This document shows positions 2,305 to 48,688 of a stretch of 64,000 bases of DNA, piece by piece. The first letter of the stretch is position 1. Each line of letters begins with the position of its first letter. Below the pieces are notes generated by a model. That model saw nothing but the letters and a program-made list of their open reading frames with translations. It was not told the DNA's origin and did no database searches. The stretch is taken from sequence record OP729297.1. One strand, given 5' to 3'. The translations under genes were made by a program, and so were the position numbers.

Positions 2305-4644
2305 ATGGCCACTGAATCTATCTACGTTGACGCATTGCGTCTAACGCCTCAGGGAGAACAGGCCGTTGCGAACGCTAACGCTGGTGGACTTGCTATTCAA
2401 CCAGTGTCGTTTAAAGCAGGTGACTTTGTTGGCTCTAACCCTTCTGTGGTTCCAGAGCAGTTACTTGGCAGCGAGCTTGCGTCGGGCGCATTGTCGTATG
2501 TTCAGGTTCTTACCGAGAACAGTGCCCGCTTTATCTTTGATATTAAAGTCAACTACGTTGCAGGCGAATCGCTGAAACGAGTTGGTGAGCTGTTGATCAT
2601 GCTTTCTGACAACCGACCTTTTGGTCACGTTGTTCTGCAAGAGCCTATCATCGCCGTACCGAACTCTATCAATCGCGTTAGCCTTCTCGTACATATTCAG
2701 CAGGACATCCAAAAGATTCTTGCTGTGAAAATGGCTGACTACACATCTATACCGAGTGTAGCAACGCTCCAGAACTTACCGAGCTTGAGCGATAACGTGT
2801 TCAATGCCGTGTCGGTTCTTGATATGCACGTTAACTCTGACGGCACACGCTCTCCAGGTACTGCATATCGTTATGGACAAGGCTCATACTATTGGGCTTT
2901 CAGTGAGCATGACCGTGTGTTCAGCGGCCAGATTACTGCCGCAGGATTCATCAATGCAAACACGTTCAAGATTGCTTCGCTGTCCTCAGTGTTGAAGGCT
3001 AACGAGGTTGTTCTGATTCAGACAATCTCGGGTACGGGCGCTGGTGCGTGTCGTCACTTCAAATACACGAATGGTCAACTGGTCAACATGGACAGCGCGA
3101 TTCCATTCGTTAGCGCACAGACAACTATTGCCGTGTGGCGACGCATCACTAACCCAACAACTCCGTCTGCTGGCATTCCGTGGCCGCTGAATAACGATGT
3201 ACCAGAAGCGTGGGCATTGTACAGAGGCAAAGACTTGCAGCCGTATTGGGGACCTGTTGCTGGTGGTACTCGTCAAACAACTGGTACGCTGTTTGTTCCT
3301 CCAGGCAAACTGTTATTCAGTTCTGTTGTGACTACAGCAACGCCTGATAAGCTGCGCTACACGCTGTCTGAGATTCTCGATAGCTCAACCGACCTGTTGC
3401 TTGGTACGTCAGGTGTTCTCCAGCCGCGTACTGCCTACAGTGTTGTTGATGACCAGCTTCTGCTTTCGTCTTATCCTGAACAACGTATGCAACTCGATAT
3501 GCGTCAGTTCCGCGTTGAGCCTTCTCAAGGTCACGTTGTTCTGTTTGAGACATACGAAGGTGTTGGCGACGGACAGACTGCGCTGTTTAAACTCGGCAAC
3601 AAACCGATTGATAGCGTTGACATGGTGTTCTGTGTCGTCGGTTCAACGTGGCAGCCTACCACCGTGTATAAACTCACGAATGGTAACAGCGTAACGTTAA
3701 CCGAAGCAATCCCGTCAGGTCAGAAGTACACATTCTATGTAGCTCGCTATGAAGAACGCGCCAACTGGTCTACTCGTATTCGTGTTGCTCAGTATCGCCT
3801 GCCTTATGATGCTGATACATTTGTTCTGCCAACTACGCCACTGAACAAGTCGCATTGCGTTATGGCCATGAGCGGCCTGACAGTACACACGCAGGACTTC
3901 ACAGTAGCGGGCAATGTGCTGAAAACGTTGTCGCCTATTCCTGCCGACACACTCATTGAGATCACAATCTTTGAGAACGTTATGGCAGTAGGCTCGAAAG
4001 ACAGTTCGGTCGATGGCGTTATCATTGATGCTATCCCTACGCCGACTGGCTACATGTTCAAACGTCAAGGTCTGCCTCCTATCGACGTGCCTATCGCTGC
4101 ACCTGAAATCATTCAGGGTGAGGGCATTCAGATTACAGGCAAGTGGCCAGAGATTACAATTCGTAATACTCAGGCTCTCGCCGAAGAAGCTGACCCACGC
4201 AACATGTACAACATTCAGCAGAATGCGGACGATTCGGAAGAGCTGGTTATTCAGCAGCGCATCGAGTTCAAGAAAGGCATCATGCTTACGTGTGTCGCCG
4301 ACTTCCAGTGCCAACTAGGTCCTGGCTTTGCTGCCACCAGCGGTAAAGAGCATCTCGAATATGTTCTGTCGTTCAAGGTGCCTGGTACATCCGAAGCTGA
4401 ATATGGGCGTGGCCTTAAAGGCACAGGCAGTGCTGGCTTTAACGTTGTTACTTCTGATGCGAGTCTGACAGAAGTGATTGCGTATTCAAACGTTAGCCTG
4501 ACGCAGATGTTCACGGTGCTGATAGAAAACCAACCTCAAGGCTTCATTGATATCGTTGCTAAAGTGCGTATCGTTAACGCGCAGATTACAAGCTACGGTT
4601 CGAAGCTGTCAGGTAACTTGTGCATTAAGGTTGAACCGAAATGA
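2305..4644 (+). CDS. Tail fibre/baseplate-associated protein with tail-collar-like N-terminus and three ~60-70 aa beta repeats
   Basis: GGAG RBS then ATG at 2305. The N-terminus ([14 protein letters not shown]) resembles tail-fibre attachment domains, followed by repeats of the type [10 protein letters not shown]...QP..Y...N.VTL...P.G. Confidence 0.55.
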
Positions 4645-6080
4645 CAACACAGTTAAAACTTTCGCAAATCGAAACAACGGCTAACGATGAAGGTAAATCG
4701 CTGGTCGGTGTTGATGGTAGCGTCGAGTTTGAGTCTACGGACTTAGCGACGAATACTCAGATCGCAAGCGTAAGGTTTAACAGCAAGACAGGCGTGTTGG
4801 TGTTCATCAAGAAGAACGGGGAAGTAGTGAACGTCCCCGGACTTCCTACTATTGCTATGTTCGGTGAAGGGAAACCTGGGCGTCGAGGCGCTCCAGGTGC
4901 TCCTGGCCGTGACGGACGTGATGGTCGAGATGGTGAAACAGGCAGACAGGGCTGCGAAGGTGGTCCTGGCTCTAAAGGTAAGACTGGTCCTGTTGGTGAC
5001 CCAGGACGTGATGGTGAAGACGGTCCTCCTGGTGATACTGGGCGTCAAGGTCCAGACGGTCCTACGGGCCCAGACGGCCCTCCTGGTCCTACAGGTAACA
5101 TCGGTCCTCGTGGTGCTACTGGAGCAAGCTGTATCTCTGGTGCTACAGGCCCTACTGGCCCAGCGCCTATTACAACTGCTGTTCAGTCTAACACGCAGCC
5201 TACAGATGGTCGTGTGTTCGTTTGGTTGTACCCTACAGCCAACGTTACGCCAGCACCTCCTCTGCCTACTATAACGCCTCTTGCTGCGTCAGTGTCTAAC
5301 CTGTACATGGTAGGTCAACGTGCAGTGCAAGGCTCTGATGTATTTACTTCGCTTGCATACCTTCCTGTCAATGCGCGTGGTGGTGTAGGTCCATATAAGT
5401 ATCAATGGTCTATCACAACTACTGAGGGCGTAACGCTTGGCGCTACTGATACCTCAACGTGTATTGTTAACTTCTATCTGCGTCTCGGACTTGGTGCTGA
5501 TCGTACAATCAAAGGCACAATCCGTTGCGTAGTTACTGACCTGGGCCAAGCGTCACGTCCTACTGTTACTGTGAGTTCTGCGCTAACAGTTGTTGCACGT
5601 AACCCAACAAGCTCAACGTCTGGCTGTATTGTGTTTGGTTCTGTTGTCGAAACAATTACAGGACCTAAAGCTGTCGAGGACTTACGTGTAGGTGATAGCC
5701 TACTGAGTTTCTCTAATCAGCCTAAGAACTTCCGTCAGTGGTCTTCGCCTAGTCTCAAAGGCAATCTGGTGAATGCTACTGTTGTCGGTTTGAAGTACGG
5801 CGAAGAAGATCACTACTTCGTTATCAACGGACAGAAGTTCACACACGAACATCCAGTGCTTGTATATGACGATAGCGTGTGGCGTTATATTCCTGCGCGT
5901 GATGTGCAGCCAGGGAATACAGTGCTTGGTCGTAAGGGTCCTGTGTCAGTGTATGAGTTCCGCCGCGTAGATAATCAAGTGAAGACTGTTGATATCGACG
6001 TTGACCCATTTGATTGTTATTTCGTTGGTGATGTGCTCGCACACAACACGGATATTGTTGCGAAAGCGGAGAAAAAGTAA
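4641..6080 (+). CDS. Collagen-like fibre protein with an Ig/PKD-like domain and C-terminal Hint domain
   Basis: About 33 G-X-Y triplets, then a [10 protein letters not shown] Ig-like module, then CIVFGS...THEH...LAHN-T. Confidence 0.85.
5625..6047 (+). other. Hint (mini-intein / bacterial intein-like) domain, 141 aa
   Basis: Cys1 (TGT 5625), VEDLRVGD block, TxxH block B (THEH), terminal His-Asn (6042-6047), +1 Thr; no endonuclease insert. Confidence 0.85.
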
Positions 6081-6712
6081 TGAGTCTGATTAAAGTTAAG
6101 ACCGGTCTCATTCAGGCTGGTTCTTCGTCTACGCCTACTGCGATTCGTGCTCAGTCTGGGGTTCTCTCGATAGACCCTAGCGACGAACAGGTTCCCTCTG
6201 AGGTAACTTCCGATTCGTCGTTCGATGCAACTTCGGGTATTCTTACTCTCAAGTTTGCTAACGGGCAGACAGTTAAGGTAGGCGGCTTCCCTACTGCTGC
6301 TGATATACCTGAAGGTCGTCAGGGCGGTAGAGGTGAGACAGGTGCTGATGGTAAAGACGGACGAGATGGCCGCGATGGTAATCCAGGTGAGCCTGGGTGT
6401 ACTGGTCCTGTGGGTCCAGATGGTGAGCAGGGTATCCCAGGACCAGATGGCCGTGACGGATTACCAGGCCCTGTTGGTCCTACTGGCCCAGATGGTAGAA
6501 CAGGCCCTATGGGTCCTACTGGTCCTACTGGCCCTCGTGGCGGTACTGGTCCTACAGGCGCTACTGGTTCTACTGGACCGACTGGTCCTACCGGCCCTGC
6601 AGGTCCTGCTGGACGCCTGTCTATCATCGTCAGTGCTACTAACCCAGGGAACGTTGCTGCTGGCACAATCTGGGTGGACCCTACCAAAGATCAGAATATC
6701 ACATGGCCATAA
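6080..6712 (+). CDS. Collagen-like fibre protein 2
   Basis: [15 protein letters not shown]-domain, long G-X-Y tract, C-terminal SATNP..GTIWVDP motif. Confidence 0.85.
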
Positions 6713-6721
6713 GGAGGCAAC

Positions 6722-7213
6722 GTGGTAGAAAAAGTTGATATATCGCTCGTTAAGGCCAATGCTTCTGGTCCTGTCGTAGCGACCGAAGGGGGAATCACAG
6801 TTGATACTGTTCAGGATGATAGCCAACTCAGCGGCTCATTCGATGCAGTTACAGGTCTACTGGCGATTAACATCCCTAATATCGGCAAGCTCCAGATTTC
6901 TGGTCTGCCTACAATACACAGCATCGGCTACGGTCCTGCTGGTGGCGTTGGTCCTGCTGGCCGTGATGGTATTGATGGTCTCATGGGTAGCGATGGTCGT
7001 CGCGGTACTGATGGCTGTCCTGGTCCTCGTGGTTCTGATGGGCAGCAAGGTAAGCAAGGCTACGTAGGTAATCGCGGGCCTGCTGGTCCTACGGGCCCTA
7101 CTGGACCTACTGGCGCGCCAGGTAATCCTGGTACGGTGATGGTCTTCGTACAAGATACAGATCCAGCCATTGATAATGAGATCGCACCAGGCGCCATCTG
7201 GGTACGGCCGTAA
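6722..7213 (+). CDS. Collagen-like fibre protein 3
   Basis: AAGGAGG RBS and GTG start; FDAVTGLL..GLPT domain, G-X-Y tract, ends PGAIWVRP. Confidence 0.85.
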   Translation: MVEKVDISLVKANASGPVVATEGGITVDTVQDDSQLSGSFDAVTGLLAINIPNIGKLQISGLPTIHSIGYGPAGGVGPAGRDGIDGLMGSDGRRGTDGCPGPRGSDGQQGKQGYVGNRGPAGPTGPTGPTGAPGNPGTVMVFVQDTDPAIDNEIAPGAIWVRP

Positions 7214-7222
7214 GGAGAGAGC

Positions 7223-9247
7223 ATGTCACGTTTTCGCGTTCGTAATGCTGCGAATAACGGTTGGCTTGACTGCGTGGACACGCCCATGTTCATACGCACA
7301 CATGCAGGAGACTGGACGCCATTAAGCCCAGACAAATTCAGTGTGCGTAATCAGTGGGGAAAGAGTTGGTTACCAATCAACGACTCTTTCGACCCTACGT
7401 ATGATGACCCGTGTTCAAACCTTGAGACGGGCGCATGTGGTGGCGGTCCAACGTCAACTACCAAAGGTTCTGGTAACGGGATAGGGAGTGGTGGCCGTGA
7501 GAAATACGATATCCTCAAAGGCTATCCTGCAGGGTTTGATTTACCTGATGCTGGTCGCACTGGCTTCGGTCTTATTAACTCTTTCTCTCCTCCTACTGGT
7601 CGATCTATCAATAGACCCGGCATCAAGACCATCGAATCATACGACCCTACTGGTGTTGCTTCTCGCGCAGGGCTAGGCACTTATGCTAACCCTAACGTAC
7701 CTTACGCTTCTGTTCATGGGCGTGGTGCTGTTATCACCGAGACGTATTATGCAATGCCAGCAATCGAAGGTTACGTGGAGCTGATGATCGCGTCCTATGC
7801 ACCAGCTGGTGCTAGTGTTGACGTGTACCACATGGGTGTGCGTGTTGCATCGACGTGTGGTAAGCTGGCCGGTCGCTCGCGCATCAAATTCCAATTCGAC
7901 CCTGACGCTGCTGATATGCGTATCATGGTGCGTGTGCGTACAACGCAGGGTTATGGCTGGAGCTTAGAAGTATATCCTCCGCGCCTTGCCGCACCTTCTG
8001 ACCGTGGCGGATTAGCTCTCGATAGTCAGGCATCGTATGACGTTATCAATTTCCCTGACGTCATTCATCCAGACTACATCGGCAGCCCAATCTTCCCTGC
8101 ACCATGTCATGCAACTGTTTGGCCTATTGCTGAACGTATTCAGAATGCTAACGCTTTCGAATACTATCACTTCATCGGCTGGACAGCAGGCTGGATGTAT
8201 CTCGACTACACCTCGTGGGAAACATTCGACTTCATTGAGGTCTATCAGTCTGGTCGCCGTATCGCTACGACGCTTGACGCTCGTACTGGTGAGGGTTATC
8301 TGTATTTCTACTTTGACCCTCAAGGTGTTGCATGTGATATCATGGTGCGCGTAGTCAGTAAGGACTTTGGTAACGCTGCCTCGCTTGCGAGTTGCTTCTA
8401 CAGTCTGTACTGTCCTGGTGAACGTGGTGCGCGTGAATACATGCACCCTTGCCAGAGCTACAGCGTGTACTCTGCCGGTCATCCAACCACAGAAGATAAT
8501 TTTGCGTTAGGAACTCAATCGGACATTCGTGCAGAGCTTGTTGTTTGTGTTGCGAACTCGTTCGATACCAAGTTCGAAGTGTTTGACCAAGACATGAACG
8601 TGCTCGATACCTCTATCGTTGCTGCGGGCAAGACTGGTACACTCGAATTTTGGAAGTACCCTGAGCATGTGCTGCGCTCTAACATCACTGTACGAGCGAC
8701 AGCGCCTATCGGATGTGATTGGTCATACTTCGTGTACTGTCCGATTCAGCCTCCTAAGATTAACGTGAGTGACTTCACCGTTCCTTATCGTTGCGTAACA
8801 ATCGAAGGTGGTAACGATCAGCCGCCAGATTCAGACGTTCTGCCGTGGCAGCCAAACGCATGGGAACAAACAGGTGGACGCGGTACAGGTTCTCCTAATG
8901 CTTCTCAAGTGTGGACACGCGACGGTAACTACATGAACATCTGGGGCGGTGTGAATGGTTGGTTCAAGTGGGGTAACTTCTTCACTAAGCCAATTAAGCA
9001 AATCACTTTCGCATGGGTGTACGACGGTAAGAATGGTGGCTGGCACACAATTGAGATCTACGAGCGCACTGCTGGTGAAGGCGCTGCTAAGAATCCTGCA
9101 AACAACAGCGGAACGTATCAGTATTTCACGTTCGATGTGAACATACCTGTTGGCCAAGAAATTTGGTTGCGTGTTCAAGGTGGCGGTGACCGTGGTGACT
9201 CGAACGACCTCGATTATCTCGCTATCACCAACGTAGTATTTGGATAA
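7223..9247 (+). CDS. Cys-rich virion fibre-associated protein with three internal beta-sandwich repeats
   Basis: Three N-terminal (F/M)x(V/I)R(N/T)..W repeats and three ~110-aa repeats with the pattern ..VY..G.R(V/I)A(S/T)T....F.FDP....IMVRV. Confidence 0.55.
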   Translation: MSRFRVRNAANNGWLDCVDTPMFIRTHAGDWTPLSPDKFSVRNQWGKSWLPINDSFDPTYDDPCSNLETGACGGGPTSTTKGSGNGIGSGGREKYDILKGYPAGFDLPDAGRTGFGLINSFSPPTGRSINRPGIKTIESYDPTGVASRAGLGTYANPNVPYASVHGRGAVITETYYAMPAIEGYVELMIASYAPAGASVDVYHMGVRVASTCGKLAGRSRIKFQFDPDAADMRIMVRVRTTQGYGWSLEVYPPRLAAPSDRGGLALDSQASYDVINFPDVIHPDYIGSPIFPAPCHATVWPIAERIQNANAFEYYHFIGWTAGWMYLDYTSWETFDFIEVYQSGRRIATTLDARTGEGYLYFYFDPQGVACDIMVRVVSKDFGNAASLASCFYSLYCPGERGAREYMHPCQSYSVYSAGHPTTEDNFALGTQSDIRAELVVCVANSFDTKFEVFDQDMNVLDTSIVAAGKTGTLEFWKYPEHVLRSNITVRATAPIGCDWSYFVYCPIQPPKINVSDFTVPYRCVTIEGGNDQPPDSDVLPWQPNAWEQTGGRGTGSPNASQVWTRDGNYMNIWGGVNGWFKWGNFFTKPIKQITFAWVYDGKNGGWHTIEIYERTAGEGAAKNPANNSGTYQYFTFDVNIPVGQEIWLRVQGGGDRGDSNDLDYLAITNVVFG

Positions 9248-45845: not shown

Positions 45846-47975
45846 TTACTTAAAGATATCGCCTGGCTTCTTCTTACGCTTCTTCGCGTACGGAAGTAAG
45901 ACGTGTTCGATAAGCGCTTTGGATGCAGCGTGTGTCATTGCTGGCACACAGATACGACCGAGACGCTCCCATTGTTCTTCGAATTTGCCCACCAGCTTAT
46001 AGTCAGAGGGCAGACCAGAAATAACTTTGAGTTCGTCGATGGTCAGTTTACGGCGATGGCCTTTGTTATCTTCGATGAAACCAGCAGACGAGAACCGCGC
46101 AGTTTCATAGGCTATCGCATCGGCCGCAGTGATAGTCGGCATCGGTCCGTTCATCGCAGGCAGATACGTAATGATATCTTTCTTCGTGGACTTATACCGT
46201 TGAATATGCGGCAGCGCATCGGCAAGGAATGCCATTGTGTCACAAGGCACAACATCAGGCACAGCGGTCTTAATGCTCTTGTGACCGAGAGCGTGTGCTA
46301 CGTCTTTGCGTACACCCATGAAGATGATACGCTCTCGGGACTGAGGCACACCGAGCCAGGCAGCGTTAAGCAGCGGCGCTCGGACGTAATACCCAATCCT
46401 GTCGAACTCTTTCATGATCTCGATGAAGTAACCTTTCGAAGCGCCCTTAACAAGACCACTAACGTTCTCCGCAGTGAACACTTTCGGCATCATGCCTTCC
46501 AGCATACGGCAATACTGATCGAACAGGTCATCAACCTGCTGATACTTGTTATCGCTGTACTTAACTTCTTTGCCCCAGCCTTCTTCTTTCACGCCGGCAG
46601 TCGAGAAGCCTTTGCAGTTGTGCACCACAGTACCATTAGCCACGTAGGTTTCGTCAACTTCAACCGAGAAGTTATAGACGTCACAAGTTGCCTGATACGC
46701 AAGGTTCTCAATCACTTGTACCCACAGGTTCGGGTCTTCTTTATCGAACTCGTGGAAGAAGTTGTGCTCTTCCTGCAGGAACAAATAGCCGAGATGCTCA
46801 CGCGCACTGTTACGCTCTTTTGGAGTTAACGCGCTACCGAAATACACGTCGCCCCAAATCATTCCGTCGAATAGCGGACGGTTGAACGCAGAACAGCACA
46901 GGTAGTTCATCTCTAACAGGAAGCGCTTGCTTGAAGACGTGATAGCAAGGCCAGTGCCCATCGCTGTAACGTAGTCATGCCCAGCGCAGCCGAGAATGAA
47001 TTGACGTTTCAGTTCGGTGCTCAGGTGGAATACCAGAGCAGGTAGACGACGAGAGAACGTGTTGTTGCCAGCACTGACGAAGCGGCGCAGGAACTGCACC
47101 AGCTCGGCGTCGATAACAGTACGGAACGTTTTACGTTGTGCTGTCATGCGGTCGATACGGTTCAGGCTACTGAGTTTAAGCGCATCAAACGCCTGCTCAA
47201 TCATCGCGTTTTCCAGACTGGTATGCGATTCGAAGCTAACAACTTCTACACCACTAACAGTCTCGATTGAACCGCGATCACACCAGTGACCTACCATCCA
47301 CCAGAACTCAGGGATGCTCACCCACTGCTGAATCAACTTCGGCAGTTGTTCCATCTGGGCGTGTACTGCATCTGCACCAATGTCAGGAGTAGTTCTTGGA
47401 GTACCGACCAGGTCACCTTCCTGCACGTCTTTAGCGTCACACCAGAACGGGTCAGAGAAGCCACCAGACTCAAGCGGACGACGAATGAAGAACGGATGCT
47501 CGGGCGTTGCGTTGTTTGCACTGATCAGAGTTTCAATCTTGTGCATAGTACCGACATACGGACGAACCATAGTGTCATACACAGGAAGATACTGACCGAT
47601 GCTTGTCATCGCTTTATCGCCGACGTTCATGTCCGAGATGAACTTCATGCCGTCTGCTGTATGAATGATAGTGTCTTCGGTAAAGCAAGGAGGACTACCG
47701 TCAAGTAAATCCAATTCGCCTTTAGACAGACCAGCATAGCGCATCAGCTTGCCTGGGTCTAAGCGACGAATATCATGCGGCAGCACTTTGGTTGTCGGGT
47801 GGTTTGCTTCATACGACTCACGCGCCGAGTCAACAAACTCGTTACTCAGCACGATGTTGATACCGGCCATCTTGTGACCGGTAGAAGAACCACCGCAACC
47901 TGCGAAGAAACTCATACCACGCCAGGGTTTATCCAGCTTGTTGATTTCCTTCATCGTAGGCGGCTTGATGATCAT
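45846..47975 (-). CDS. C5-cytosine DNA methyltransferase interrupted by an intein
   Basis: Motif I FFAGCGG, motif IV GSPP/C, ENV, PQSRER.IF.G and C-terminal R.LT..E...G.P. Confidence 0.92.
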   Translation of the reverse strand: MIIKPPTMKEINKLDKPWRGMSFFAGCGGSSTGHKMAGINIVLSNEFVDSARESYEANHPTTKVLPHDIRRLDPGKLMRYAGLSKGELDLLDGSPPCFTEDTIIHTADGMKFISDMNVGDKAMTSIGQYLPVYDTMVRPYVGTMHKIETLISANNATPEHPFFIRRPLESGGFSDPFWCDAKDVQEGDLVGTPRTTPDIGADAVHAQMEQLPKLIQQWVSIPEFWWMVGHWCDRGSIETVSGVEVVSFESHTSLENAMIEQAFDALKLSSLNRIDRMTAQRKTFRTVIDAELVQFLRRFVSAGNNTFSRRLPALVFHLSTELKRQFILGCAGHDYVTAMGTGLAITSSSKRFLLEMNYLCCSAFNRPLFDGMIWGDVYFGSALTPKERNSAREHLGYLFLQEEHNFFHEFDKEDPNLWVQVIENLAYQATCDVYNFSVEVDETYVANGTVVHNCKGFSTAGVKEEGWGKEVKYSDNKYQQVDDLFDQYCRMLEGMMPKVFTAENVSGLVKGASKGYFIEIMKEFDRIGYYVRAPLLNAAWLGVPQSRERIIFMGVRKDVAHALGHKSIKTAVPDVVPCDTMAFLADALPHIQRYKSTKKDIITYLPAMNGPMPTITAADAIAYETARFSSAGFIEDNKGHRRKLTIDELKVISGLPSDYKLVGKFEEQWERLGRICVPAMTHAASKALIEHVLLPYAKKRKKKPGDIFK
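46617..47687 (-). mobile_element. Intein (357 aa) with degenerate LAGLIDADG region
   Basis: Begins CFTEDT, has TPEHPF block B, VYNFSVE block F, ends VVHN, +1 Cys. The middle has eroded LAGLIDADG-like helices (VGHWCDRGS; FILGCAGHD). Confidence 0.9.
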
Positions 47976-47977
47976 TA

Positions 47978-48688
47978 TTATCCCTCGAACTTGAATCCAC
48001 AACGCGGGCAGGTGCAGTTCAGAGCGTCACCCACATCATCTGGGCTATACTCGTTGAACTTGCCGGTACTACCGTTCATCTGGCCAGTAGTCTTGCCAGC
48101 ACGTTTCTCGTCCTGCACAACGGCCTGAACTTTCAGCTTGGCTTGAAGACCACGAATTTCTAACGGGTCGAGACCGAGCAGTTGAGGCTTGATTGTATTG
48201 AGGTCGAGTTGTTCAACCAGCTTGGCGAGTTTCTTGTTATCGAACTCACCGCCATGGGCGTTTGCCGCGATGTTCGCAGCGTACTCAGCTTTCTTATCAG
48301 TCCAGTTCACGACACGCAGAGGAATGCTGATCACTTTATCAGCTTTCTTCGGATGCGTTGCGTGGATATAACCCAGGCCGATTGTACCGTGCTTGTCAAC
48401 AGACTTTTGGATCTCGATACGAGTCTTCCAGCCTTCGATCGATTTCAGGCGCTGGTGGCCAGAGATCAACACGCCTGATTTGACGTTGTTGTTGAACACG
48501 ATACCAGACAGGTCGCCGAAACTACCCAAAGAACCTTCGAGCGCTTTCAGGCGACTGTCTGTAATGAAGCGCGGGTTGTACGCTGCACCTTTCAACTGAG
48601 CGACGGAGTTGAGTTTCTTCAACTCAAACTTTAGTCCGTCGTTCTTTTTCTTTTTCCCTTCCTTTGCTTTGATAGCAGTTTTTGCCAT
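47978..48688 (-). CDS. ParB/Srx-like N-terminal domain protein with C-terminal CPxC zinc-ribbon tail
   Basis: YNPR.I...L..SL..FG...IV.N...ISGHQRL; ends CTCPRCGFKF. Confidence 0.8.
   Translation of the reverse strand: MAKTAIKAKEGKKKKNDGLKFELKKLNSVAQLKGAAYNPRFITDSRLKALEGSLGSFGDLSGIVFNNNVKSGVLISGHQRLKSIEGWKTRIEIQKSVDKHGTIGLGYIHATHPKKADKVISIPLRVVNWTDKKAEYAANIAANAHGGEFDNKKLAKLVEQLDLNTIKPQLLGLDPLEIRGLQAKLKVQAVVQDEKRAGKTTGQMNGSTGKFNEYSPDDVGDALNCTCPRCGFKFEG

What the first reader, a model, noticed from the sequence alone, without database searches (positions are those of the whole stretch)
5625..6080. Intact Hint domain at the tip of a collagen fibre with only a 10-residue C-extein
Seen: Cys1, TxxH, His-Asn and a +1 Thr are all present, with no homing endonuclease, and only [10 protein letters not shown] follows. 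Established: inteins splice, while Hedgehog/BIL Hint domains use the N-terminal thioester for cleavage or for ligation to another nucleophile. Inference: a selfish intein is unlikely to persist 10 residues from a C-terminus without an endonuclease. This looks like a domesticated autoprocessing module, either a self-removing folding chaperone or a device that covalently couples the fibre's Ig-like domain to another virion protein or host molecule.
Basis: partly seen in the sequence, partly recalled or inferred. Interest (0 to 1): 0.72.

Follow-up and report, generated by a model that had tools for sequence, protein, structure and literature searches.

The report
Self-removing Hint cap on phage fibre
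A jumbo Erwinia phage fibre protein ends in an intact, strongly conserved intein-like (Hint/BIL) domain followed by ten residues; it looks like an inherited self-processing end-cap found on many phage fibres, not a mobile intein, but no processing has been shown.

Summary
The window is Erwinia phage vB_Ea_2910A. ORF 4641-6080 (479 aa) consists of an N-terminal domain, a collagen repeat, an Ig-like domain, a TSSTSG linker, a 141-residue Hint (Cys329, T401xxH404, His468-Asn469) and the tail [10 protein letters not shown].

Its nearest sequence and fold neighbours are bacterial intein-like (BIL) domains. All 23 orthologues (45-98% identity) keep the domain and its catalytic residues. It is under purifying selection (pN/pS 0.30) and has co-diverged with the rest of the protein (r = 0.92).

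The more distant phage NCTB also has the domain at the syntenic gene. The closer Salmondvirus phages lack it, and their protein stops at ...ARNPK with no tail. That pattern fits one loss, not an intein empty site.

The +1 Thr is not conserved; it is Ser, Ala, Val or Met in relatives. Part of the tail's conservation (A-E-K) is the Shine-Dalgarno site of the next gene.

Of the 150 nearest cluster representatives, 103 carry the Hint at the extreme C-terminus with a tail of 1-19 residues. Many sit on fibre-like proteins. 99 of the 103 tails contain a lysine.

Best reading: a domesticated type-A-BIL-like cap that excises itself. Its biological role is inferred, not shown.

The parts
4641..6080 (+). 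Whole gene: 479-aa collagen-like virion fibre protein with a C-terminal Hint cap (phrog_38766, 'virion structural protein')
   Evidence: ORF list. The PHROG match covers the full length, E 1e-256. The sequence is 100% identical to OP729297.1, Erwinia phage vB_Ea_2910A.
4641..4865 (+). N-terminal domain (aa 1-75), shared with the two downstream collagen fibre paralogues; probably the virion-attachment end
   Evidence: The paralogues at 6080-6712 and 6722-7213 match phrog_38766 from about position 20 onward. The attachment role is inferred by analogy with other tail fibres.
4866..5165 (+). Collagen G-X-Y repeat (aa 76-175)
   Evidence: Pfam Collagen, E 1e-13. Glycines are invariant at every third position in alignment A1.
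5166..5606 (+). Middle region (aa 176-322); beta-sandwich (Ig-like) domain from about residue 205, ending in the invariant Asn321-Pro322
   Evidence: AlphaFold pLDDT is 80-93 over about residues 205-322. Fold matches to Ig-like proteins are weak. The region is 50% identical to the Hint-less JA29 orthologue, which stops one residue after this point.
5607..5624 (+). Linker TSSTSG (aa 323-328); Gly328 is the -1 residue of the predicted scissile bond
   Evidence: This is the most variable segment, with mean identity 0.53, but Gly328 is invariant. In the wider family the -1 residue is Gly in 28 of 49 proteins, often within a poly-Gly linker.
5625..6047 (+). Hint domain (aa 329-469, 141 residues): Cys329 (5625-5627), T401xxH404 (5841-5852), His468-Asn469 (6042-6047)
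   Evidence: establish the domain. The catalytic residues are invariant in all 24 sequences. pN/pS is 0.30.
6048..6077 (+). Ten-residue tail [10 protein letters not shown] (aa 470-479) with three lysines
   Evidence: Residues 470-475 are constrained at the amino-acid level, with pN/pS 0.26 and synonymous variation present. In the wider family, 99 of 103 short tails contain Lys.
6066..6082 (+). Shine-Dalgarno site (GGAG at 6068-6071) inside tail codons 476-478, stop TAA 6078-6080, and the overlapping ATG (6080-6082) of the next collagen fibre gene
   Evidence: GCG GAG AAA is invariant at the nucleotide level in 11 of 12 orthologues; one has AAG as the last codon. pS is only 0.21 here.
6080..6712 (+). 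Downstream paralogous collagen fibre gene (210 aa), without a Hint
   Evidence: The gene is syntenic in every relative examined.
6722..7213 (+). Second downstream paralogous collagen fibre gene (163 aa), without a Hint

Best explanation
The domain is a vertically inherited Hint of the type-A bacterial-intein-like (BIL) kind. It acts as a self-removing cap on the C-terminal end of a collagen-like, Ig-tipped virion fibre; that end is probably the one distal from the virion.

**Proposed mechanism (inferred from the conserved residues and published Hint chemistry).**
1. Cys329, assisted by Thr401 and His404, converts the Gly328-Cys329 peptide bond into a thioester.
2. Asn469, assisted by His468, cyclises and cuts the bond to the tail.
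3. The thioester is then resolved in one of three ways: by Thr470 as in a class 1 intein (possible in this phage), by an amine of the short tail (the alpha-amine freed by step 2, or a lysine side chain), or by water.

**Outcome.** The Hint is released either way. The mature fibre ends at Gly328, either bare or carrying the ten-residue tail.

**Biological role (inference only).** A removable pro-domain that helps or controls folding or assembly of the fibre tip. This would be functionally analogous to, but unrelated in sequence to, the peptidase S74 intramolecular chaperone of other phage fibres.

**Shown here:** domain identity, residue conservation, selection, distribution and the loss in one lineage. 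**Not shown:** any processing event.
For: **The domain is an intact Hint whose closest relatives are BILs.**
- The best PDB sequence hit is 2lwy (C. thermocellum BIL).
- The best fold hits are 2lwy (TM 0.80) and Tetrahymena BIL2 (6y75/6tmm), ahead of mini-inteins.

**The chemistry is under selection.**
- Gly328, Cys329, Thr401, His404, His468 and Asn469 are invariant in 24 sequences at 45-98% identity.
- Hint pN/pS is 0.30 with synonymous sites near saturation (pS 0.71).

**Inheritance is vertical.**
- Pairwise Hint and N-extein identities correlate, r = 0.92 over 276 pairs.
- Every homologue of the middle domain found at 57% identity or more is 477-480 aa long, that is, it carries the Hint.
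- A homologous Hint (33% identity, E 4e-13) caps the syntenic gene in the distant phage NCTB.

**The Hint and tail are dispensable as a unit.**
- JA phages are closer to the window phage than NCTB is. The neighbouring gene is 62% identical in JA29 against 29% in NCTB.
- JA phages have the fibre ending at ...ARNPK, with no Hint and no tail.

**BIL-like rather than intein-like.**
- The +1 residue varies: T, S, A, V, M.
- Type A BILs keep His-Asn, lack the +1 nucleophile, and give mostly cleavage with some splicing through the freed amine (PMC4031507; PMC7664689).

**The architecture is general.**
- 103 of the 150 nearest cluster representatives (103 of the 138 that end in His-Asn) have the Hint at the extreme C-terminus. 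None has a zero-length tail.
- Cys is the first residue in 47 of 49, and only 13 of 103 have C/S/T at +1.
- Of the 57 examined for domains, many have fibre-like N-terminal parts: collagen in 12, Ig, fn3, PKD, the tail-fibre N-terminal domain, and PHROG tail-fibre families.
- The genomic contexts that could be read are phage structural modules.
Against: - No direct evidence of cleavage or splicing exists for this protein or any orthologue. The Y3 virion proteomics paper is not in the held library, and no paper on C-terminal Hint domains of phage fibres was found.
- Hint domains are not known to trimerise, so the chaperone analogy with S74 is weak.
- The two paralogous collagen fibres and the JA orthologue manage without a Hint, so any assembly role is not essential.
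- If only N-terminal cleavage mattered, the invariant His-Asn and the amino-acid-level constraint on tail residues 470-475 would be unexplained. The mechanism must therefore involve the C-terminal junction, and the purpose of that step is unclear.
- Purifying selection on catalytic residues alone does not prove benefit to the phage, because failure to excise could simply be harmful.
Confidence: 0.6

Rival explanations
1. The point of the reaction is the ligated product. The Hint splices the conserved tail onto Gly328, either by a peptide bond through Thr470 or by an isopeptide bond to a tail lysine. On this reading the mature fibre needs that C-terminal tail.
For: - In the DNA-compared orthologues, tail residues 470-475 are constrained at the amino-acid level despite synonymous change (pN/pS 0.26).
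- The +1 residue is Thr in 21 of the 24 sequences in alignment A1, and Asp471 is invariant.
- His-Asn is invariant, and a residue always follows it.
- Lysine is nearly universal in the short tails of the wider family (99 of 103).
- BIL2 of Tetrahymena, the second-best structural neighbour, is reported to form a Lys-epsilon isopeptide with its C-extein (PMC8616854).
Against: - The Hint-less JA orthologue has no tail-like sequence at all.
- The +1 residue is Ala, Val or Met in several relatives.
- Family tails can be a single residue, which is hard to see as a functional appendage.
- The A-E-K invariance is due to a ribosome-binding site.
Confidence: 0.15
2. The Hint is a ligation device acting in trans. 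The Gly328 thioester is attacked by a nucleophile on another virion protein or on a host surface molecule, coupling the fibre tip covalently. This would resemble Hedgehog cholesterol transfer or BUBL ubiquitin-like conjugation.
For: - The Gly-Cys junction at the start of a C-terminal Hint is as in Hedgehog.
- There is structural similarity to BIL2, which is reported to conjugate its N-extein to lysines of other proteins without ATP.
- The catalytic residues are invariant.
Against: - No adduct-recognition region follows the Hint; there are only 10 residues.
- His-Asn and a tail are conserved, which a pure N-terminal transfer does not need.
- No partner has been identified.
- The JA lineage dispenses with the whole module.
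- A thioester is unlikely to persist on a virion (general chemistry, inference).
Confidence: 0.12
3. The Hint is retained unprocessed as a structural or receptor-binding tip domain.
For: - It sits at what is probably the distal end of the fibre.
- At large evolutionary distances it is more conserved than the rest of the protein (slope 0.5).
Against: - A purely structural role does not explain why exactly the nucleophile, block B Thr/His and the terminal His-Asn are invariant across a family otherwise at about 30% identity.
- A receptor-binding tip would be expected to vary with host. AD1 (Dickeya host) and the Erwinia phages share a Hint that is 99% identical.
Confidence: 0.08
4. The domain is an ordinary selfish mini-intein that recently invaded the gene and has lost its homing endonuclease.
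For: - It has Cys1, TxxH, His-Asn and +1 Thr in this phage.
- The same window carries a genuine intein in a DNA methylase gene.
Against: - It is present in all orthologues and has co-diverged with the host protein.
- Its GC content is close to that of the window.
- The insertion point is not a conserved site. It is a variable linker at the end of the protein.
- The Hint-less homologue has no continuous extein sequence across the site.
- The +1 nucleophile is not conserved.
Confidence: 0.04

Closest known systems
Type A bacterial intein-like (BIL) domains (e.g. Clostridium thermocellum BIL, PDB 2lwy)
   Same: - It is the best sequence and fold match.
- It has a Cys1 nucleophile, block B TxxH and a C-terminal His-Asn.
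- The +1 residue is not a conserved nucleophile across the family.
- There is no endonuclease.
- It lies in a variable region, not a conserved site, of a surface or extracellular fibrous protein.
   Different: - It is encoded by phages, at the extreme C-terminus of virion fibres, followed by only 1-19 residues that almost always include a lysine.
- The window's own copy has a +1 Thr.
- Processing has not been demonstrated.
Tetrahymena BUBL BIL2 domain (PDB 6y75/6tmm)
   Same: - It is the second-best structural neighbour.
- It is reported to resolve the thioester with a lysine epsilon-amine of the C-terminal flank, giving an isopeptide (PMC8616854). The phage family has a near-universal lysine in its C-terminal flank.
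   Different: - Sequence identity in the fold alignment is only 17-18%.
- BIL2 sits between ubiquitin-like domains, whereas here the C-flank is a ten-residue tail.
- There is no evidence that the phage lysines act as nucleophiles.
Hedgehog C-terminal autoprocessing (Hog/Hint) domain
   Same: It is a C-terminal Hint that begins at a Gly-Cys junction, and its N-terminal product is the functional part.
   Different: - Hedgehog-type domains use only the first step and carry an adduct (sterol) recognition region.
- This domain keeps His-Asn and has only ten trailing residues.
Peptidase S74 intramolecular chaperone domain of phage tailspikes and fibres
   Same: It occupies the same position (the C-terminal end of trimeric phage fibres, including collagen-repeat fibres) and follows the same logic of a self-cleaving, discarded module (PMC7824862; PMC12143355; PMC12220804).
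   Different: - The fold and chemistry are unrelated (Ser-Lys dyad, trimeric).
- No S74 signal is present here.
- A chaperone role for the Hint is conjecture.
Pre-toxin HINT (PF07591) of polymorphic toxins
   Same: It is the best Pfam model, scoring above the gathering threshold. 29 of 57 wider-family members also match it.
   Different: No toxin domain follows and no immunity gene is present. Both flanking genes are fibre or structural genes.

Membership tests
HINT superfamily | Hint fold | tested here: met
   The AlphaFold model has pLDDT about 90 over residues 329-470. Foldseek matches 2lwy (E 5.5e-8, TM 0.80) and many inteins.
HINT superfamily | N-terminal Cys/Ser nucleophile and block B TxxH | tested here: met
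   Cys329, Thr401 and His404 are invariant in all 24 sequences. Cys is invariant in the 57-member wider alignment, and the block B Thr and His are at least 90% conserved there.
Canonical class 1 intein | C-terminal His-Asn | tested here: met
   His468-Asn469 are invariant.
Canonical class 1 intein | +1 Cys/Ser/Thr nucleophile, retained among homologues | tested here: not met
   The window has Thr470. Relatives have Ala (P0022, P0024, NCTB), Val (fHe-Yen9-02) or Met (Afa-NA1, P0025). Only 13 of 103 in the wider family have C/S/T.
Canonical class 1 intein | Inserted within a conserved site of the host protein; intein-free homologues are continuous across the site | tested here: not met
   The junction lies in the most variable segment, at the end of the protein. 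The Hint-less JA29 homologue stops at ...ARNPK with no C-extein counterpart.
Canonical class 1 intein | Sporadic, horizontally mobile distribution (often with a homing endonuclease) | tested here: not met
   There is no endonuclease (141 residues). The domain is present in all orthologues and has co-diverged with the host protein, r = 0.92.
Canonical class 1 intein | Demonstrated protein splicing | not testable with these tools
   No proteomic or biochemical data were accessible.
Type A BIL domain | Hint motifs with C-terminal His-Asn but no conserved +1 nucleophile | tested here: met
   The definition is taken from PMC4031507. Caveat: the window copy itself has Thr at +1.
Type A BIL domain | Closer in sequence and structure to BILs than to inteins | tested here: met
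   2lwy is the top hit by both sequence and fold.
Type A BIL domain | Predominant N- and C-terminal cleavage with minor splicing | not testable with these tools
   This is a biochemical property (PMC4031507, PMC7664689).
Hedgehog-type autoprocessing domain | Adduct (sterol) recognition region after the Hint; the C-terminal junction chemistry is dispensable | tested here: not met
   Only ten residues follow the Hint, and His-Asn is invariant. That Hedgehog uses only the first step is stated in PMC7664689. The recognition region is from my own knowledge.
Pre-toxin HINT of polymorphic toxins | Followed by a C-terminal toxin domain with an adjacent immunity gene | tested here: not met
   The Pfam model matches, but nothing except the tail follows, and the neighbouring genes are fibre genes.
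Peptidase S74 intramolecular chaperone | S74 domain sequence or fold | tested here: not met
   There is no Pfam S74 match and no such fold hit. The resemblance is a functional analogy only.

The most novel reading that the evidence does not exclude
The short lysine-bearing tail is a built-in acceptor. These phage Hint caps would transfer the fibre's C-terminal glycine from the Cys thioester to a lysine amine. The lysine could be in the protein's own tail (self-resolving 'side-chain splicing'), or in trans on another virion or host-surface protein. That would make them an ATP-independent, BUBL-like protein-lysine ligation system used in phage fibre maturation or attachment. The near-universal tail lysine (99 of 103) would be its signature.
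Probability: 0.15. Interest if true: 0.8.

Novelty: new variant of a known kind. Interest (0 to 1): 0.6.

Why it matters
Hint/BIL chemistry is well known, but its natural roles outside inteins and Hedgehog are poorly understood. Here it appears as a conserved end-cap on phage fibre proteins across several jumbo-phage genera. The same arrangement recurs in many uncultured phage proteins: a Gly-rich linker, a Cys1...His-Asn Hint, and a short tail containing lysine.

If processing is confirmed, this would be a second, chemically distinct solution to phage fibre maturation, alongside the S74 intramolecular chaperone. It would also be a natural case in which a BIL domain has a clear selective role.

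The tail-lysine pattern gives a concrete, testable hint about how the thioester is resolved. Compact natural self-cleaving or self-ligating C-terminal modules are also useful to protein chemists.

Tried and rejected
**Literature.**
- Searches for Hint or intein-like domains on phage tail fibres found nothing relevant.
- The Y3 paper that reports virion mass spectrometry is not held, so no proteomic evidence could be read.

**Searches that returned nothing useful.**
- NCBIfam gave no model for the Hint.
- The word-indexed search with the middle domain found only Hint-bearing proteins and missed the 44%-identical JA orthologues. Those came from tblastn against phage genomes.

**Ideas rejected.**
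- The idea that conservation of the last tail residues shows a functional C-extein was rejected for A-E-K. These codons are invariant at synonymous sites and form the next gene's Shine-Dalgarno site.
- The idea that tail lysines are only a by-product of purine-rich ribosome-binding sites, or of the search query's own tail, was tested and not supported. The lysine is present where the Shine-Dalgarno site lies in a spacer, and in 42 of 45 hits whose alignment stops before the tail.
- Recent horizontal acquisition was considered and rejected on composition and co-divergence.

**Limit of the tools.** The structure tool returns no coordinates, so whether the tail lysines approach Cys329 in the model could not be examined.
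Full report
**1. What is there**

The window is 100% identical over this gene to Erwinia phage vB_Ea_2910A (OP729297.1), a 263-kb jumbo phage. Related phages are described as 'hairy Myoviridae' (PMC6143709).

ORF 4641-6080 (+) encodes 479 residues. Its parts are:
- an N-terminal domain (aa 1-75);
- a collagen G-X-Y repeat (aa 76-175; Pfam Collagen);
- a middle region whose residues about 205-322 are modelled confidently as a beta-sandwich;
- the linker TSSTSG;
- a 141-residue Hint (Cys329, T401-H-E-H404, His468-Asn469);
- the tail [10 protein letters not shown].

The Hint is real and not a chance match:
- Pfam PT-HINT scores above its gathering threshold.
- The best PDB sequence hit is the C. 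thermocellum bacterial intein-like domain 2lwy, E 7e-7.
- The model has pLDDT about 90 over the Hint.
- The best fold matches are 2lwy (TM 0.80) and Tetrahymena BIL2, followed by mini-inteins.

There is no room for an endonuclease.

**2. Conservation and inheritance**

The Hint search against 5.8 billion proteins returned 23 proteins, all 476-490 aa long, and all carry the Hint. In their alignment Gly328, Cys329, Thr401, His404, His468, Asn469 and Asp471 are invariant.

By tblastn the Hint is present in 55 phage records. The records fetched are assigned to Alexandravirus, Sasquatchvirus, Yoloswagvirus, Rivsvirus and Snuvirus, plus an unclassified Yersinia phage.

A codon-level comparison of 12 orthologues gives pN/pS 0.30 for the Hint, with synonymous sites near saturation (pS 0.71). 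This is as constrained as the Ig-like region (0.31) and the collagen repeat (0.33). The linker is the most variable part.

Pairwise identity in the Hint tracks that in the non-collagen N-extein (r = 0.92, 276 pairs). The slope is 0.5, so the Hint diverges more slowly than the rest. Its GC content (0.46) is close to that of the window (0.50). These results argue for long vertical inheritance under selection.

**3. The Hint-less relatives**

A tblastn search with the middle domain found four Dickeya Salmondvirus phages (JA11, JA13, JA29, JA33) that the Hint search had not found.
- In JA29 the syntenic gene is 324 codons and ends ...ARNPK. That is one residue after the Asn-Pro that is invariant in the Hint-bearing proteins. 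It has no linker, no Hint and no tail.
- The more distant phage NCTB has a Hint at the end of its syntenic 506-aa gene (GGGG|C ... HN|AVMVAKK), annotated 'contains intein domain'. That Hint is homologous to the Erwinia-phage Hints (33% identity, E 4e-13).
- The neighbouring gene is 62% identical between the window and JA29 but only 29% identical between the window and NCTB.

The parsimonious reading is that the cap is ancestral and was lost once, as a clean truncation, in Salmondvirus. This is not an intein 'empty site', because there is no C-extein in the Hint-less protein. It also shows that the functional fibre can end at about residue 323. That fits a model in which the Hint is removed or dispensable in the mature fibre.

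**4. The C-terminal junction and the tail**

The +1 residue is Thr in most orthologues. It is Ser in P0021, Ala in P0022 and P0024, Val in Yersinia phage fHe-Yen9-02, Met in Afa-NA1 and P0025, and Ala in NCTB. Canonical class 1 trans-esterification therefore cannot be the conserved mechanism.

The last tail residues A-E-K are invariant because their codons (GCG GAG AAA) are invariant even at synonymous sites. They hold the GGAG Shine-Dalgarno site eight bases upstream of the next gene's ATG, which overlaps the stop codon.

Residues 470-475 (T-D-I-V-A-K/Q) do show synonymous variation, with pN/pS 0.26, so they are constrained as protein.

**5. A wider class**

A full scan of 1.84 billion cluster representatives gave 357 hits. 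Among the best 150:
- 138 end the domain with His-Asn.
- 103 have the Hint at the extreme C-terminus, with a tail of 1-19 residues and never zero.
- The first residue is Cys in 47 of 49 alignable cases.
- The -1 residue is Gly in 28 of 49, often as a poly-Gly linker.
- Only 13 of 103 have Cys, Ser or Thr at +1.

The N-terminal parts of the 57 proteins examined include collagen repeats (12 of 57), Ig, fn3, PKD, Calx-beta and BACON domains, the phage tail-fibre N-terminal domain, and PHROG tail-fibre families.

The contexts that could be read are phage structural modules. One is a 311-kb contig with the same gene order as the window. Another gene lies next to an SU10-type adaptor gene.

NCTB carries three Hint genes in this one module. 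They include a 1304-aa protein with the same poly-Gly/Hint/short-tail ending and a stand-alone 153-aa Hint.

The window's feature is therefore one member of a recurrent 'C-terminal Hint cap' on phage fibre proteins. I found no paper describing this class. GenBank annotators had noted an 'intein domain' in Y3_110 and in NCTB.

**6. An unexpected regularity**

99 of the 103 short tails contain at least one lysine. Lysine makes up 13.7% of tail residues, against 3.8% in the same proteins. Controls:
- Random same-length segments of the same proteins give about 27 of 103 (maximum 40 in 1000 draws).
- C-termini of ORFs in the window give about 38 of 103 (maximum 58).

The lysine is the last or penultimate residue in 59 cases.

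The pattern is not explained by embedded ribosome-binding sites in the two cases where the Shine-Dalgarno site lies in a spacer. It is also not an effect of the query's own tail, since 42 of 45 hits keep the lysine where the alignment stops before the tail. The representatives are related, so this is not a phylogenetically corrected statistic.

The window's tail has Lys475, Lys478 and Lys479.

**7. How it most likely works**

Type A BILs keep His-Asn and lack a +1 nucleophile. They form the N-terminal thioester and cut at the C-terminal Asn. They give mainly cleavage products, with some splicing when the freed amine attacks the thioester (PMC4031507; PMC7664689). The phage domain fits this description by sequence, by fold and by family-wide residue pattern.

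I therefore propose self-excision in three steps:
1. N-S acyl shift at Gly328-Cys329.
2. Asn469 cyclisation.
3. Resolution of the thioester by Thr470 (possible in this phage), by a tail amine, or by water.

The invariant His-Asn, the rule that at least one residue always follows it, and the conserved lysine all suggest that the tail takes part in resolving the thioester. Tetrahymena BIL2, the second-best structural neighbour, is reported to use a lysine epsilon-amine of its C-flank in this way, forming an isopeptide (PMC8616854).

All of these steps are inferred. No processing has been observed.

The biological purpose, a removable pro-domain that aids or gates assembly of the Ig-like tip, is an analogy with the S74 intramolecular chaperone. 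It is the weakest part of the argument, because the JA orthologue and the two paralogous fibres do without a Hint.

One argument for benefit to the phage is that a terminal domain can be lost by simple truncation, as happened in Salmondvirus, yet it has been kept everywhere else. This argument is tempered by possible translational coupling to the downstream gene.

**8. Rivals**
- Splicing in order to display the tail (0.15).
- Trans-ligation to another protein or to a host molecule (0.12).
- An unprocessed structural tip (0.08).
- A recent selfish mini-intein (0.04).

The evidence for and against each is given in the rival entries.

The same window contains a textbook intein for contrast. It is 357 residues, sits inside a C-5 DNA methylase gene, and has the junctions ...GSPP|C ... 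VVHN|C..., with Cys as the first residue after His-Asn.

**9. Verdict**
- The interpretation as a domesticated autoprocessing module is supported by comparative evidence but untested biochemically.
- The specific roles remain open.
- The feature is a new variant of a known kind: a BIL-type Hint used as a terminal cap of phage fibres.
- The family-wide tail lysine is a new, unexplained detail.

Noticed in passing
window 45846-48002 (-), intein about 46617-47687: A canonical large intein of 357 residues sits inside a C-5 cytosine DNA methylase gene. It has Cys1 and His-Asn, with junctions ...GSPP|C ... VVHN|C..., so the +1 residue is Cys; from my own knowledge this looks like the enzyme's catalytic Pro-Cys motif. 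An insert of about 230 residues lies between the Hint halves. It is a useful internal contrast to the fibre Hint.
   Followed up: partly
window 6066-6082: The Shine-Dalgarno site (GGAG) of the next collagen fibre gene lies inside tail codons 476-478, and that gene's ATG overlaps the stop codon (TAATG). This nucleotide-level constraint mimics protein conservation of A-E-K.
   Followed up: yes
wider family (proteins P0024-P0171); window tail 6048-6077: 99 of 103 short tails after C-terminal Hint domains contain a lysine, usually as the last or penultimate residue. Controls give 27 to 38 of 103. This is unexplained. The lysine may be an acceptor amine for the thioester.
   Followed up: partly
L014 1524-5438 and L016 1398-3379 (phage NCTB): NCTB has three Hint genes in the same fibre module. 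They are the syntenic 506-aa fibre, a stand-alone 153-aa Hint ORF directly after it, and a 1304-aa protein with a poly-Gly linker, C-terminal Hint and 7-residue tail. That last gene occupies the same position in the module as window ORF 7223-9247, for which Pfam finds no domain.
   Followed up: partly
proteins such as P0050, P0073, P0079, P0103: Some metagenomic proteins carry tandem arrays of related Hint domains joined by ...VHNK-GGGG-C... linkers. The +1 residue is Lys in 21 of the 35 proteins with long tails.
   Followed up: no
window 4953-4955 and 5130-5132 (Cys105, Cys164): Two cysteines, one within the collagen repeat and one near its C-terminal end, are invariant in all 24 Hint-bearing orthologues. 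JA29 keeps only the second. They may form interchain disulfide staples of the triple helix.
   Followed up: no
L002 (Alcaligenes phage Afa-NA1, PV550095.1) and Salmonella phage Sen-NF (PV359490.1): Two records with different stated hosts and sizes (78 kb and 108 kb) give the same identity, E-value and score for this fibre module. The module is syntenic with the jumbo-phage module. Its Hint has a Gln|Cys junction and a +1 Met.
   Followed up: no
window 4641-7213: Three consecutive collagen-repeat genes share a related N-terminal domain, and only the first has the Ig-like domain and the Hint. The relatives are 'hairy Myoviridae' in the literature (PMC6143709), so these genes may encode the tail hairs.
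   Followed up: no
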